A stretch of DNA of 64,000 nucleotides from Paramoeba atlantica. Its lineage: Eukaryota > Protista > Discosea. The DNA is taken from positions 40,214 to 104,213 of the forward strand of contig CDRNVI010000138.1 in assembly GCA_977017575.1 (NCBI GenBank), given 5' to 3'. Shown here in pieces: positions 350 through 57,783 of this stretch. Made by a program: the position numbers and the translations under genes. Within the stretch, counting starts at the first letter, position 1. Each line of letters starts with the position of its first letter. Under the pieces are notes generated by a model. That model searched no databases and was not told the origin of the DNA. It saw only the letters and a list, made by a program, of their open reading frames with translations.

Positions 350-2012
350 ATGGCTTCTGAAGGTCACCCACTTGAACAAACACCTCCTTTGTATTTGACC
401 GATCGTCGATTTCTTTTGACTTGTAGTGATGATGTTGTGAGTCCCCAAGAAAAAGAAACACACAAACGTTTTCTCTTGGAGGAGATCGAGAAGAAAGGTT
501 TTTTGTTCTGTTTTTTTTTTTTTCAAAACAAAGTTGGAGATATCGTTCACTTTTCTTCTTCTCTATCTATGATAGAGAGAGAGTCTCTTTCCTGAAATTT
601 TTCATTCATCTTAGGTATGGTTCATCTCTACCTTGCTCTTTGTGATCAATTCAAATGGGCCAAAGACGAGAAGAAAGTTGATGAGATGAAAGAAAAAAAC
701 TCGAAAATTGTTGAAGGATTGAAGAACAAAATCGAAGATGCTGTGGAGAACTTTGGTGAAAGTGAAGTCAGAGAAGCAACCTTAGCAGAAGCTGAACATT
801 ATTGCCGAATTGTGGATAAAGAAAACGCAGTAAATGCGTATCGAGAAACTCTTTCAAAAACAATTGGAAAAGGTGAAAAACTTGACATTGTCTTTTCATT
901 AATTCGGTTGGGTTTCTTTTGGCGTGATTCCCCTCTTATTTTGAGAAACATTGAGCAAGCCAAAGATCTTCTTGTCACTGGTGGTGATTGGGATCGAAAA
1001 AATCGTCTCCATGCTTATGAAGGTTTTTTTCTTTTAACTTTTCTTTTTTTTTCTTTTTTTTTTTTGGTGAGGGAGGGAGGGAGGAAGGGAGGGAGGTGGC
1101 GGGTTGTATTTTGTTTTTGGCATTTCTTGTGTTAAAAGGCCGATTTGGGTGGGTATTTTTTTTTTAATGAAAAAAAAACCCAAGAAGAACATAATTTTTC
1201 TTTCTTTTTTCGAGAACACACAACCAAAAATTCTCACCGTCACACAAACAACAACAGGTCTTTACTTCATGTCAATTCGTTCATGGGATGAGGCAGCCAC
1301 GTTGTTCCTTGAAACTCTTGCTACATACACTTGCACTGAATTGTTCGAGTACAAACGTTTCATCTTTTACACTGTGGTGCTGTCGTTGGTGACTCTTCCT
1401 CGTCCAGCTCTCAAGAAAAGGATTCTTGAATCTCCTGAAGTTCACGGTGTAATTGACGAGATTCCCAGTCTTGGAGATTTGATTAATTCATTCTATAATG
1501 CCGAGTATCGTCTCTTCTTTCAATCACTTGGTGTCATTGTTGATCAGCTCAAAAAAGATCGGTATTTAAGTAATTTTGCTGGGTACTTTTGTCGAGAGAT
1601 GAGAATCAAAGCGTACAATCAATTACTTGAATCCTATCGTTCTCTTCAAATCCGCAACGTCGCAGATCAATTTGGAGTCACTCCTGAGTTTATTGATACT
1701 GATCTTTCACGTTTCATTTACTCTGGACGTGTGTACTGTAAGATTGATGCTGTTCGTGGGATTATTGAGACCTCTCGTCATGACGTTAAAAATACTCATT
1801 ATCAGGTTATTTTTCTTTAACCCATTTTCTTCTTTAACCCATTTTCTTCTCATTTTTTCTTTCCTGAACGTGGGAATTTTCATTTTTTTATTGTTGCTTT
1901 TTTTTTGCTTTTTTTTTTTGAACTAAATTTCTTTTTGTTTGACTAGATGACTTTGAAATCTGGAGACAATCTCATGCACCGAGTCCAGAAATTATCTCGT
2001 GTGATTATCTGA
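350..2012 (+). CDS. RPN7: 26S proteasome regulatory subunit RPN7/PSMD6 (PCI domain); exons 350-497, 615-1022, 1258-1805, 1947-2012
   Basis: GT-AG splicing joins the frames into one protein with GGDWDRKNRLHAYEG, YCKIDAVRGIIET and C-terminal GDNLMHRVQKLSRVII*, all matching RPN7 family motifs. Confidence 0.95.
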
Positions 2013-2101
2013 TTCAAAACAAATCCCCTTTTACAACAACAAACAAAAAAAGTATAAAAAAATTCTAAAAAAAAATATAAGTTTATGTTTTTTAATTTTC
2101 T

Positions 2102-55900: not shown

Positions 55901-57783
55901 CAACCTAAACCTGATGTATTGATTAATGAAATCCTTCTTATGAAATGGTTTTTCTTTTTTTTTATTTGTCTTTATTATTGAAAAACTATTTTTCCATCTT
56001 ATAATAACCCATAACCCAATTAAAATAAAAAGGTTGAAGGAGAAGAAGATAAAGAGTATTCAAGTTAGAATTCTATTACCAAATAAAAAAAAATAACAAA
56101 TAAGAATATCATTCCAAGAAGATAAATAAATTAATGAAAAAAAATGTAGTTGTCAACATCCAGCAATTGTTGGATTTCATGACAGTTTCTTGCTTGAGGA
56201 AACTCTTTGGGTTATTATGGAACTTGTCGAAGGTGAAGATTTAACACAGGTTAACTTTTCTTTTCTTTTCTTTTGTTTTTTCTTTTTCCCTCTCGTTAAT
56301 TTCTCTTTCTCTTTCACTTTTTTATCTCTCTTTCTCTTTCGTTTATTCCTTTCTCATGTGGGTTGATTAGGTTTTGACTTGTAATGATCTTACTGAACCT
56401 CATATTGCGCTGATCACTCGTGAGGTATTATTCTCTTCTCTTTTATTTGTTTATTTGTTTATTTTGTTTATTTGTTGTTAGTTATACTATTGTTTAATAT
56501 TGTCATTTTGATAATAAAATTTTATTTATTGTTTGTGTTTTTTGTTTGTGTTTTTTGTTTGGTCTAATTAGTTTTAAATTAGTCATTACTTGCTCTTGAT
56601 CATCTTCATCAACAAAGAATTATTCATCGCGATATTAAGAGGTTCCCTCTCTTTTTATTTATCAATTTTTAACATTTAAGAAATTAATCCTTAATAATCT
56701 GTTTTATATTTCTTTTTTGCGCTATTTTTTCACCATTTAACATATTTTTTATTCCACATTTTTTATTTTTCATTGATATTTTGGGATTAGTGATAATATG
56801 ATGGTTTCTGGTGTTTCTGGGGAAATTAAATTGACAGATTTTGGGTTTGGTGCGCAACTAACGAATGAACAATGTTTGATTTCTCCTTTTTTCATTCTCC
56901 TTTTTCATTTTCTCTTTCCTCCTCTTCTTTTTTGTTTGGGGGCAATCAAGGAAAAGAGAATAAAAATAAGTCATCTTTTCTTTCTGATTGTCAAAAATAG
57001 CAAATCGAAAGTCAATGGTCGGAACATCTTATTGGATGGCTCCGGAAGTGATTCAATCTGATGAGTATGATATTAAGGTTTTTCTCTTTCTTTCGCTTAA
57101 TTACCCCTCTTTTATCTCTCTTCAAAGAAACATTTTTTCTGTTTCTTTTTCTTTTTCATTAATCTTCATTATTTGGGTTTGGTATTAATATCTCTTTCAA
57201 GGTTGATGTTTGGTCATTGGGAGTAATGGTAATGGAGATGATTGAGAAAGATCCTCCTTATATGGGGATGCCTCCCACCCGTGTACTTTTTAATATTTTG
57301 AAGAAGGGCTTACCTGATTTGAAGGTTGTTTTTCTTTTTTTTTTTTTTTTCAAAATATTCAAAAGAGTTTATTCCCTTTCTTCCTTTCATTTTTGATTTG
57401 AATGTTTCTCTTCTATTTCAAACGATTACTCATGATCCTAAAATAGGAACCCGATCAATCTTCACCTGAAATTAAAGATTTTATTTCTCAGTGCACTCAG
57501 GTTTTTATCTATTTCTTTTTTTGTTGATTGGTTGGTTGTCTTTTCTTGTGAAAGTTTCTTTGTGTGTGTGTTGCTGTTCTTGTTTTCTTTGTCCTTTCTC
57601 TCATATTCTTCTTTATTTCAGAGGGAGCCAGCTGACCGTCCAACATGTGCAGAATTATTGTGTCATCCATTTCTTACAAAGGCCTGTGAGATGACTGAAC
57701 TTATCCCATTGGTCGAGGTTGTGAAAGAAGAGAAAAAGAATAGTTATTTGGATGACGAAGAAGAGGAAGAAGAGGGATGGTAA
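52981..57783 (+). CDS. PAK: PAK/STE20-family kinase with a divergent CRIB/autoinhibitory segment and proline-rich linker
   Basis: GLPQEW...AVLKFQ (CRIB/AI), GEGASGSVY, LAIKQM, HRDIK, DFGFGAQL, GTSYWMAPEV and DVWSLG across in-phase exons. Confidence 0.9.
54321..54500 (+). repeat. Internal ~96-bp tandem duplication encoding GP/RP-rich repeats in the PAK linker
   Basis: GCGGCCCAGCTCCYTCTGGACCACCAGATAGACCAAC occurs at about 54321 and 54417. Confidence 0.75.

What the first reader, a model, noticed from the sequence alone, without database searches (positions are those of the whole stretch)
498..57600. Unusual 5' splice-site dialect: GTTYTT instead of GTAAGT
Of the first 33 donors I could fix by reading frame (RPN7 to mid-midasin), about 27 have T at +3, 3 have A at +4, about 7 have G at +5, and none is GTAAGT. 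Examples: GTTTTT at 498 and 1023, GTTATT 1806, GTTCAA 3493, GTTTGT 10066; the only near-canonical one is GTAAGA at 13740. Established knowledge: U1 (ACUUAC) and the U6 ACAGA box normally pair with +3 to +6, Entamoeba uses GUUUGU, and +4U preference is associated with loss of the U6 m6A writer METTL16. Inference: U1/U6 are altered or recognition relies on exon-side pairing.
Basis: partly seen in the sequence, partly recalled or inferred. Interest (0 to 1): 0.7.

Follow-up and report, generated by a model that had tools for sequence, protein, structure and literature searches.

The report
Minimal splice donors followed by U-tracts
In this AT-rich protist genome almost no intron starts with the usual GTAAGT; introns start with (A)G|GT followed by about 30 T-rich bases, so the apparent "GTTYTT" motif is mostly intron composition and not a new code read by altered snRNAs.

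Summary
I fixed 26 introns by homology and 43 more with a GT/AG-only gene model. All 69 are GT-AG.

Donor statistics (n=69):
- +3 is T in 77% (81% of the anchored set).
- +4 is A in 12%.
- +5 is G in 23%.
- No donor is GTAAGT, GTGAGT or GTATGT.
- A perfect GTAAGT lies unused inside a conserved midasin exon (14672).

The interpretation needs revising. T is 68-75% at every position from +3 to about +26. Positions +3, +4 and +6 do not differ from that local background (p 0.3-0.7).

Real signals:
- A at -2 and G at -1.
- GT at the intron start.
- G at +5 (23% against 3.5%, p=2e-9), which is anti-correlated with exonic AG (p=0.008), as in the published two-class 5' splice-site model.

This fits ordinary U1/U5/U6 contacts plus a U-rich tract, and does not call for rewritten snRNAs.

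At orthologous introns a TARA Oceans relative has GTA/GTG donors where this genome has GTT, so the state is derived.

Limits:
- No RNA evidence could be obtained.
- U1, U6 and METTL16 lie outside the window and were not tested.
- The scan noted the same pattern before on another piece of this genome (s1-392946).

The parts
498..614 (+). RPN7 intron 1, donor AAAG|GTTTTT, acceptor CTTAG
   Evidence: Best GT-AG pair against 61 RPN7 homologs; spliced model colinear with P0122
1023..1257 (+). RPN7 intron 2, donor GAAG|GTTTTT, acceptor AACAACAG (A/C-rich 3' end)
   Evidence: margin of 30 score units over the next candidate
1806..1946 (+). RPN7 intron 3, donor TCAG|GTTATT. The orthologous intron reads GTAAGG in relative L002 and GTGAGT in TARA contig L003
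2636..2829 (-). V-ATPase F intron 1, donor GAG|GTCTTT
   Evidence: Read (VIGDE|DTITGFLL continuity); exons hit Pfam ATP-synt_F
2430..2541 (-). V-ATPase F intron 2, donor CAA|GTTCAA. A tandem copy of the same donor sits 6 bases upstream at 2547
2263..2346 (-). V-ATPase F intron 3, donor TAC|GTTTGT
   Evidence: LLINQY|IANEIR continuity
6938..7036 (-). Maf1 intron, donor AAT|GTTCGT. The ortholog in L003 has GTAAGC
   Evidence: Joint spliced alignment with L003
14541..14653 (+). Midasin intron, donor CAA|GTTTCT
14672..14677 (+). Perfect GTAAGT inside a conserved midasin exon (codons Val-Ser of ...EYLGTYVSNAEGKL...), not used as a donor
   Evidence: the exon 14654-14817 is covered by a 70%-identical homolog match
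14818..14994 (+). Midasin intron, donor TAG|GTACCT
15121..15298 (+). Midasin intron, donor TAG|GTTTTT
15357..15453 (+). Midasin intron, donor GAG|GTTTCC
16164..16291 (+). Midasin intron, donor GTG|GTTCTC
16971..17103 (+). Midasin intron, donor TAG|GTTTTC
17257..17372 (+). Midasin intron, donor TCG|GTTTGT
   Evidence: 7 homologs, single candidate
17706..17778 (+). Midasin intron, donor TGG|GTTTGA
18171..18259 (+). Midasin intron, donor AAA|GTATTT
   Evidence: 91 homologs
18431..18512 (+). Midasin intron, donor CAG|GTCCAT
   Evidence: 96 homologs
36493..36782 (-). RhoGAP-gene intron, donor ATG|GTTTTT. The ortholog in L003 has GTATTT
37341..37538 (-). RhoGAP-gene intron, donor TAG|GTTTTC. No intron at this site in L003
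37664..37815 (-). RhoGAP-gene intron, donor CGG|GTTTGT. The ortholog in L003 has GTATTT
37892..38078 (-). RhoGAP-gene intron, donor CAA|GTTTGT. The ortholog in L003 has GTACGT
   Evidence: small margin over the next candidate
56874..57000 (+). PAK-type kinase intron, donor AAT|GTTTGA
   Evidence: Flanking exons map to adjoining Pkinase profile positions 127-151 and 155-176
57078..57201 (+). PAK-type kinase intron, donor AAG|GTTTTT
   Evidence: Flanking exons map to Pkinase profile positions 155-176 and 178-206
13740..13838 (+). Midasin intron with the only near-canonical donor, ATT|GTAAGA (ab initio only)

Best explanation
These are ordinary GT-AG spliceosomal introns whose 5' splice site has decayed to a minimum. 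The donor is a weak exonic A(-2) G(-1), then the invariant GU, then a U-rich tract of about 30 nt (about 70% U).

The T's at +3, +4 and +6 belong to that tract and are not a position-specific motif. The usual +3 purine and +4 A are gone.

Two canonical contacts survive and compensate for each other:
- exonic AG, which pairs with U1 C9/U10 and U5 loop 1;
- G at +5, which pairs with the conserved C of U1 and of the U6 ACAGA box.

I infer that short introns (median about 127 nt) are defined mainly by the sharp composition contrast with exons, probably with U-tract-binding proteins helping U1. Introns are T 54-70% and G 3-8%. Exons are A 32%, G 24%, T 28%. TIA-1, Nam8 and plant UBP1 are the known precedents for such proteins (from memory, not tested here).

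Shown: the site statistics, the exact junctions, and the derived state relative to two relatives. Inferred: which snRNA and protein contacts are used.
For: All 26 homology-anchored introns are GT-AG.

T is 68-75% in every 4-nt bin from +3 to +26, and falls to 54-57% in the interior. +3 T, +4 T and +6 T do not differ from the +7..+26 background (p=0.29, 0.69, 0.51). +5 G is 23% against 3.5% (p=1.9e-9). In the anchored set it is 27% against 4% (p=6e-5).

Exonic AG and +5 G are anti-correlated: anchored 0/12 against 7/14 (p=0.006); all introns 2/29 against 14/40 (p=0.008). This matches the two 5'SS classes defined by U5 and U6 pairing (PMC11732430, PMC10581693).

Relative entropy beyond GT is at most 0.16 bit per position at +3..+6. 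Watson-Crick matches to canonical U1 over -3..+6 average 4.6 of 9.

At orthologous introns the TARA relative L003 (intron T 39%) has a purine at +3 in 6 of 8. This genome has it in 1 of 8 (Fisher p=0.04). The nearer relative L002 (intron T 51%) is intermediate.

An unchecked note from another window reports a U1 5' end that keeps CUUACCUG.
Against: There is no RNA evidence.

Only one 64-kb window was examined, with 69 introns, of which 43 are ab initio. That model matched 9 of 12 benchmark introns exactly; two of the three misses kept the correct donor and misplaced only the acceptor.

A compositional background cannot exclude selection for U at +3/+4 that happens to equal the tract frequency.

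U1, U5, U6 and every candidate protein factor are untested. With only about 4 contiguous U1 pairs per site, it is unclear that U1 could find these sites at all.
Confidence: 0.6

Rival explanations
1. A co-evolved snRNA dialect, as in Entamoeba. U1 (and/or U6) has changed so that it pairs with U at +3/+4, and GUUUKU is a true recognised motif.
For: GTTTTT and GTTTGT are the two commonest donor hexamers (16 and 9 of 69). Entamoeba shows that GUUUGU with a matching U1 (ACAAAC) can evolve (bioRxiv 10.1101/2022.06.08.495308).
Against: There is no positional excess of T at +3, +4 or +6 over the neighbouring intron bases. The hexamers are diverse: 28 different ones among 69 donors. +5 G and exonic AG behave as with canonical snRNAs. 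The unchecked U1 note reports CUUAC retained. The genome is intron-rich, unlike Entamoeba.
Confidence: 0.1
2. A U6-driven +4U class. U6 lacks m6A at the ACAGA adenosine because METTL16/SNRNP27K is lost or changed. U at +4 (with U or G at +5/+6) is then selected for Watson-Crick pairing with U6, and the U-tract only masks that selection.
For: +4 A is rare (4% in the anchored set, 12% overall) and +4 U is common (68-73%). Loss of METTL16 or SNRNP27K goes with +4 U in Saccharomycotina, and no METTL16 was found in the sampled Excavata (PMC10581693). Other agents of this scan take the genome for a euglenozoan.
Against: +4 A and +4 U equal the local background (p=0.7). +3 is also U, which the METTL16 model does not predict, since those yeasts keep GUAUGU. 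The presence or absence of METTL16 is unknown here, and the euglenozoan assignment is unchecked.
Confidence: 0.2
3. An artefact. Intron boundaries are misplaced, or the T-rich intron model pulls predicted donors towards GT followed by T.
For: The ab initio set used a T-rich intron emission model from round 2 onwards. Several junctions have alternative GT sites, for example 3457/3493 and 7225/7270/7291.
Against: The 26 junctions fixed by protein homology alone give the same or stronger figures (+3 T 81%). Round 1, with a neutral intron model, already gave AG|GTTT-type donors. The alternative sites are themselves GTT-type.
Confidence: 0.03
4. Introns of euglenozoan nonconventional or intermediate type, or derived from an introner. 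In the first case the U-rich 5' end pairs with the A-rich 3' end to bring the splice sites together. In the second a transposon family supplies the ends.
For: 16 of 59 introns have an A-rich stretch just before the AG, opposite the U-tract at the 5' end. Diplonemid and euglenid noncanonical introns pair their ends (PMC12621601).
Against: Duplex energy between the two ends of the same intron (-2.1 kcal/mol) is no better than between ends of different introns (-1.9; permutation p=0.21). There is no correlation between A at the 3' end and T at the 5' end. All borders are GT-AG. Masked all-against-all BLAST of the introns gives no sequence families.
Confidence: 0.03

Closest known systems
Entamoeba GUUUGU(U) 5' splice sites with a co-evolved U1 (ACAAAC) (bioRxiv 10.1101/2022.06.08.495308)
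   Same: U at +3 and +4 in place of the near-universal purine and A. GTTTGT is the second commonest donor here.
   Different: In Entamoeba 88-90% of introns carry the exact hexamer, the genome is intron-poor, and U1 is complementary. Here GTTTGT is 9 of 69, the sites are degenerate, the genes are packed with introns, and no snRNA change is indicated.
Sulcionema specki (diplonemid) 5' splice sites reduced to G/GT (PMC12621601)
   Same: GT-AG introns in an intron-rich protist with no consensus beyond G|GT. That paper also reports an A-rich tract before the 3' splice site in D. japonicum, resembling a quarter of the introns here.
   Different: The S. specki sites are described as G-rich and a second U1 has a C-run. 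Its introns have a median of 42 nt. Here the flank is a U-tract and introns have a median of about 127 nt. Other diplonemids use G/GTATG.
+4U 5' splice sites linked to loss of METTL16/SNRNP27K in Saccharomycotina, and the two-class (U5 versus U6) 5'SS model (PMC10581693, PMC11732430)
   Same: +4 is U and not A. Exonic AG and intronic +5 G are anti-correlated, as in the two-class model.
   Different: Those yeasts keep +3 A and a strict GUAUGU in few introns. Here +3 is U, the site is loose, and +4 U does not exceed background.
U-rich introns of plants and U-tract enhancers downstream of weak 5' splice sites (TIA-1/Nam8/UBP1; from memory, not read here)
   Same: Intron recognition helped by U-richness, and by a U-tract just downstream of a weak donor.
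   Different: In those systems the donor still follows GURAGU and the U-tract starts after +6. Here it starts at +3.

Membership tests
U2-type GT-AG spliceosomal introns | GT at the 5' end and AG at the 3' end | tested here: met
   All 26 homology-anchored junctions have a best solution that is GT-AG
U2-type GT-AG spliceosomal introns | 5' splice site complementary to U1 ACUUAC (GURAGU consensus) | tested here: not met
   Purine at +3 in 11 of 69, +4 A 12%, +5 G 23%. No donor is GTAAGT, GTGAGT or GTATGT. Matches to U1 average 4.6 of 9
U2-type GT-AG spliceosomal introns | Polypyrimidine tract and branch-site motif before the AG | tested here: inconclusive
   28 of 59 introns are pyrimidine-rich and 16 of 59 are A-rich before the AG. 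YTRAY occurs in 28 of 65. TCTCA is enriched (14 against 4.3 expected), but not after multiple-test correction
Entamoeba-type GUUUGU dialect | Nearly invariant GUUUGU(U) hexamer | tested here: not met
   GTTTGT is 9 of 69; there are 28 different hexamers
Entamoeba-type GUUUGU dialect | U1 5' region changed to pair with U at +3/+4 | not testable with these tools
   No snRNA gene in the window or in loci L002 and L003. An unchecked note reports UUUCUUACCUG
+4U / METTL16-loss class | +4 U preferred over A | tested here: inconclusive
   +4 U is 68% and A 12%, but both equal the local intron background (p=0.7)
+4U / METTL16-loss class | Absence of METTL16/SNRNP27K, or of its Met-141 | not testable with these tools
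   Only one window of the genome is readable. No note on METTL16 exists in the scan
Two-class 5'SS model (U5-class AG//GU, U6-class //GUNNG) | Anti-correlation between exonic AG and intronic +5 G | tested here: met
   Fisher p=0.006 (anchored set) and p=0.008 (all introns)
Euglenozoan nonconventional/intermediate introns | Non-GT-AG borders and base-pairing between the intron ends | tested here: not met
   All borders are GT-AG. End pairing is no better than for random intron pairs (p=0.21)
Introner-derived introns | Introns form sequence families | tested here: not met
   Only 9 short, weak non-self hits with low-complexity masking on

The most novel reading that the evidence does not exclude
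An intron-rich eukaryote in which 5' splice-site choice no longer depends on U1 complementarity at +3 to +6. A U-tract that begins right after GU acts as the main donor determinant, read by a protein or by an as yet unseen snRNA variant. Perfect GTAAGT sites in exons are ignored. The state arose recently, since a syntenic marine relative still uses GTA/GTG donors.
Probability: 0.3. Interest if true: 0.7.

Novelty: new variant of a known kind. Interest (0 to 1): 0.5.

Why it matters
Nearly all eukaryotes keep a purine at +3 of the 5' splice site. Lineages with atypical donors, such as Entamoeba, yeasts and Giardia, are intron-poor and have strict motifs. This genome appears to combine many introns per gene with the loosest possible donor and U at +3.

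It also comes with a graded series of relatives: intron T of 39%, 51% and 54-70%, with +3 going from purine to U at orthologous introns. That series gives a natural test of how far base composition can erode a splice signal, and of what takes over when it does (U5/exon pairing, +5 G, U-tract proteins).

It also warns annotators that gene finders trained on GTRAGT will fail on this genome.

Tried and rejected
1. RNA evidence. The look-up of sequencing runs found only DNA holders, plus one run of uncertain kind that shares only the species label. No junction reads could therefore be obtained.

2. Spliced proteins from a transcriptome of this organism. None was found among hits to the midasin exon or the RPN7 exon. 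Only ORFs called on the genome contig itself were 100% identical.

3. snRNA genes. Rfam found none in the window or in L002 and L003.

4. Pairing between intron ends was rejected. Introner families were rejected.

5. Avoidance of canonical donor words in exons. GTRAG looked depleted (z=-3.1). But across all GTNNN pentamers z runs from -4.8 to +10 under the same codon-shuffle null, so this is not interpretable.

6. Branch-site motif. TCTCA is only weakly enriched.

7. Organism identity. The accessions ERZ24900291 and GCA_041447075.1 appear in no paper searched. The best named RPN7 hit is Acanthamoeba at 55%. The "euglenozoan" label in other agents' notes was not checked. Published diplonemids use G/GTATG, so the genome is none of those species.

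8. Ab initio runs on L002 and L003 with the window's coding model were too noisy to give donor statistics.
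Full report
WHAT THE WINDOW IS

The window is AT-rich nuclear DNA (30-40% G+C) of an intron-rich protist.

Genes read here:
- RPN7 (350-2012, + strand).
- V-ATPase subunit F (2093-2886, - strand).
- An LRR protein (3291-6436, +).
- Maf1 (about 6730-7732, -).
- Midasin (from about 8400 to about 35500, +, with several dozen introns).
- A RhoGAP gene (about 35880-40200, -).
- A three-domain RasGAP (44775-49349, -).
- An LSm-fold protein (50424-51065, -).
- A PAK-type kinase (53548-57782, +).
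Sources.

The same sequence is held in ENA assembly ERZ24900291, contig ctg3958l. I could not name the organism. Notes by other agents of this scan call it a spliced-leader-bearing euglenozoan, and I did not check that. The best named RPN7 relative is Acanthamoeba at 55%. Published diplonemids use G/GTATG donors (PMC12621601).

FIXING THE INTRONS

I used two independent routes.

(a) Homology anchoring, with no composition model. For each junction, every frame-compatible GT..AG pair near the ends of the protein matches was spliced in a local script. Each was scored against homologous proteins, or jointly against the orthologous gene of a syntenic relative. The results:
- 3 RPN7 introns. The 389-aa model is colinear with the 388-aa protein P0122 at 70% identity and has no gap at any junction.
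- 10 midasin introns.
- 2 kinase introns, whose flanking exons map to adjoining Pkinase profile positions.
- 3 V-ATPase F introns, read directly (with Pfam support).
- 8 introns in Maf1 and the RhoGAP gene.
That makes 26 in all.

(b) A small Viterbi gene model of my own. It knows only GT, AG, reading frame and a periodic coding model, with no donor or acceptor matrix. With a neutral intron model it already returned AG|GTTT-type donors on the coding strand and random-looking GTNNNN on the antisense strand. With an intron composition model it reproduced 9 of 12 benchmark introns exactly; two of the three misses kept the correct donor and misplaced only the acceptor. After filtering and removal of conflicts it adds 43 introns, for 69 in total.

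All 69 introns are GT-AG.

Anchored set (n=26):
- +3: T 81%, A 12%, C 8%, G 0%.
- +4: T 73%, C 23%, A 4%.
- +5: T 54%, G 27%.
- +6: T 69%.

All introns (n=69):
- +3 T 77%.
- +4 T 68%, A 12%.
- +5 G 23%.
- +6 T 67%.

The commonest hexamers are GTTTTT (16), GTTTGT (9), GTTCTT (6) and GTTTTC (5); there are 28 different hexamers. No donor is GTAAGT, GTGAGT or GTATGT. By contrast, 14 such hexamers lie unused in exons. One of them is a perfect GTAAGT at 14672 inside the conserved midasin peptide EYLGTYVSNAEGKL. Only 3493 against 3457 stays undecided.

IT IS NOT A GTTYTT MOTIF

Introns are strongly T-rich on the sense strand: T 54-57%, G 7-8% in the interior. They are more T-rich still at their 5' end, where T is 68-75% in every 4-nt bin from +3 to +26 and declines only after about +30.

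Tested against the +7..+26 background, the T frequencies do not differ:
- +3 T, p=0.29.
- +4 T, p=0.69.
- +6 T, p=0.51.
- +4 A, p=0.70.
In the anchored set the corresponding values are p=0.21, 0.68, 1.0 and 0.52.

Against the intron interior, +3 T is modestly enriched (p=0.001). Each of +3..+6 carries at most 0.16 bit.

The signals that do exist:
- A at -2 (61%; 73% in the anchored set).
- G at -1 (65-69%).
- The invariant GT.
- G at +5: 23% against 3.5% (p=1.9e-9); anchored set 27% against 4% (p=6e-5).

Exonic AG and +5 G exclude each other. In the anchored set, 0 of 12 AG sites have +5 G, against 7 of 14 non-AG sites (p=0.006). Over all introns the counts are 2/29 against 14/40 (p=0.008). 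This compensation is the one described for the two classes of 5' splice sites, read by U5 loop 1 and by the U6 ACAGA box respectively (PMC11732430, PMC10581693). G at +5 pairs with the conserved C of both U1 and U6.

The data therefore point to snRNAs with ordinary pairing faces and to sites that have lost everything else. An unchecked first-reader note from another window gives the U1 5' end as UUUCUUACCUG, which would keep CUUACCUG. I could not verify it. No snRNA gene lies in the window or in the fetched loci.

COMPARATIVE EVIDENCE THAT THE STATE IS DERIVED

Two relatives were reached through RPN7 hits.

L002 is ENA ERZ25074155, with 39% G+C and an RPN7 about 74% identical. It has the same three RPN7 introns, with donors GTTTGT, GTATTG and GTAAGG.

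L003/L004 are TARA Oceans metagenome scaffolds with 45% G+C. They carry Maf1, the RhoGAP gene and RPN7 close together and share introns with the window. At eight orthologous introns L003 reads GTAAGC, GTGAGT, GTTCGT, GTACGT, GTATTT, GTACAG, GTATTT and GTTTGG, which is a purine at +3 in 6 of 8. The window has a purine at +3 in 1 of 8 at the same sites (Fisher p=0.04).

Intron T content rises in step: 39% in L003, 51% in L002, and 54-70% here. This fits erosion of the site by a compositional drive towards T. The numbers are small, and some L003 junctions have close runners-up.

RIVALS TESTED
- Pairing of the U-rich 5' end with the often A-rich 3' end, as in euglenozoan nonconventional introns. 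The same-intron duplex is -2.1 kcal/mol, against -1.9 for mismatched pairs (permutation p=0.21). There is no correlation between the two tracts.
- Introner families. None was found.
- Avoidance of GTRAG in exons as a sign of a canonical U1. This is not interpretable, because the null is too dispersed.
- An artefact of my intron model. This is excluded by the anchored set.

LIMITS AND HOUSEKEEPING

The sequencing runs that hold the region are DNA. Local scripts on the closed machine did read the whole window file, including an all-against-all comparison of the window's own introns and a comparison with L002 and L003.

Joined (spliced) protein models were built only inside local scripts, for alignment to proteins and loci already fetched. 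Exons were searched singly, by reference.

METTL16, SNRNP27K, LUC7, U1-C, U1 and U6 could not be examined. Everything rests on one window of 69 introns. That note is a lead, not independent proof.

VERDICT

U at +3 in about 80% of introns of an intron-rich genome has, as far as I could find, a precedent only in intron-poor Entamoeba, where the cause differs.

The best reading is a minimal (A)G|GU donor with a compensating +5 G, set at the head of a U-tract about 30 nt long. It is not a new hexamer code and does not require altered snRNAs. I class it as a new variant of a known kind and rate the interest at 0.5.

Noticed in passing
3' ends of introns, e.g. window 10280-10311, 14625-14653, 18485-18512, 35155-35185: About a quarter of introns (16 of 59) have an A-rich (A/C) stretch where a pyrimidine tract would be, directly before the AG. 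About half (28 of 59) have a normal C/T tract. A is 46-54% at -4 and -5. An A-rich tract of this kind is reported for the diplonemid D. japonicum (PMC12621601).
   Followed up: partly
window 6727-7732, 35909-38263 and 350-2012, against L003 778-1757, 4205-5929 and 8581-10057: Maf1, a RhoGAP gene and RPN7 lie within 10 kb of each other on a TARA Oceans scaffold (also L004). In the window they are spread over 38 kb. The relative is a compact-genome marine organism with mostly shared intron positions.
   Followed up: partly
window 37341-37538 (- strand): This RhoGAP-gene intron has no counterpart in the TARA relative, whose exon is continuous there. It is an intron gain or loss between close relatives.
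   Followed up: no
window 2536-2550 (- strand): The V-ATPase F intron 2 donor is a tandem duplicate (AGTTCA AGTTCA). It offers two in-phase GTTCAA donors 6 bases apart, which would add or drop Ser-Ser.
   Followed up: no
last 45 nt of introns, e.g. window 1233-1239, 15425-15432, 14410-14418: TCTCA (often TCTCAY) is the most enriched non-A-rich 5-mer near the 3' ends: 14 introns against 4.3 expected. Its A lies mostly 13-31 nt from the splice site. It is a candidate branch-site motif, not significant after multiple-test correction.
   Followed up: partly
window 14278-14439 and 15357-15453: The 3' 55 nt of these two midasin introns are 80% identical (…CTCTCA(CA)TGAAAAACAAAAYAG). This was the only non-trivial similarity between introns.
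   Followed up: no
window 1067-1100: A G-rich (GGGA/GGAGG)n microsatellite sits inside the otherwise G-poor RPN7 intron 2. My gene model mistook it for a small exon.
   Followed up: no
window 50424-51065 (- strand): A small Sm/LSm-fold protein gene in at least three exons (Pfam LSM, E=2e-10 and 1e-4), that is, a splicing or RNA-decay core component. Which Sm/LSm paralog it is was not determined.
   Followed up: no
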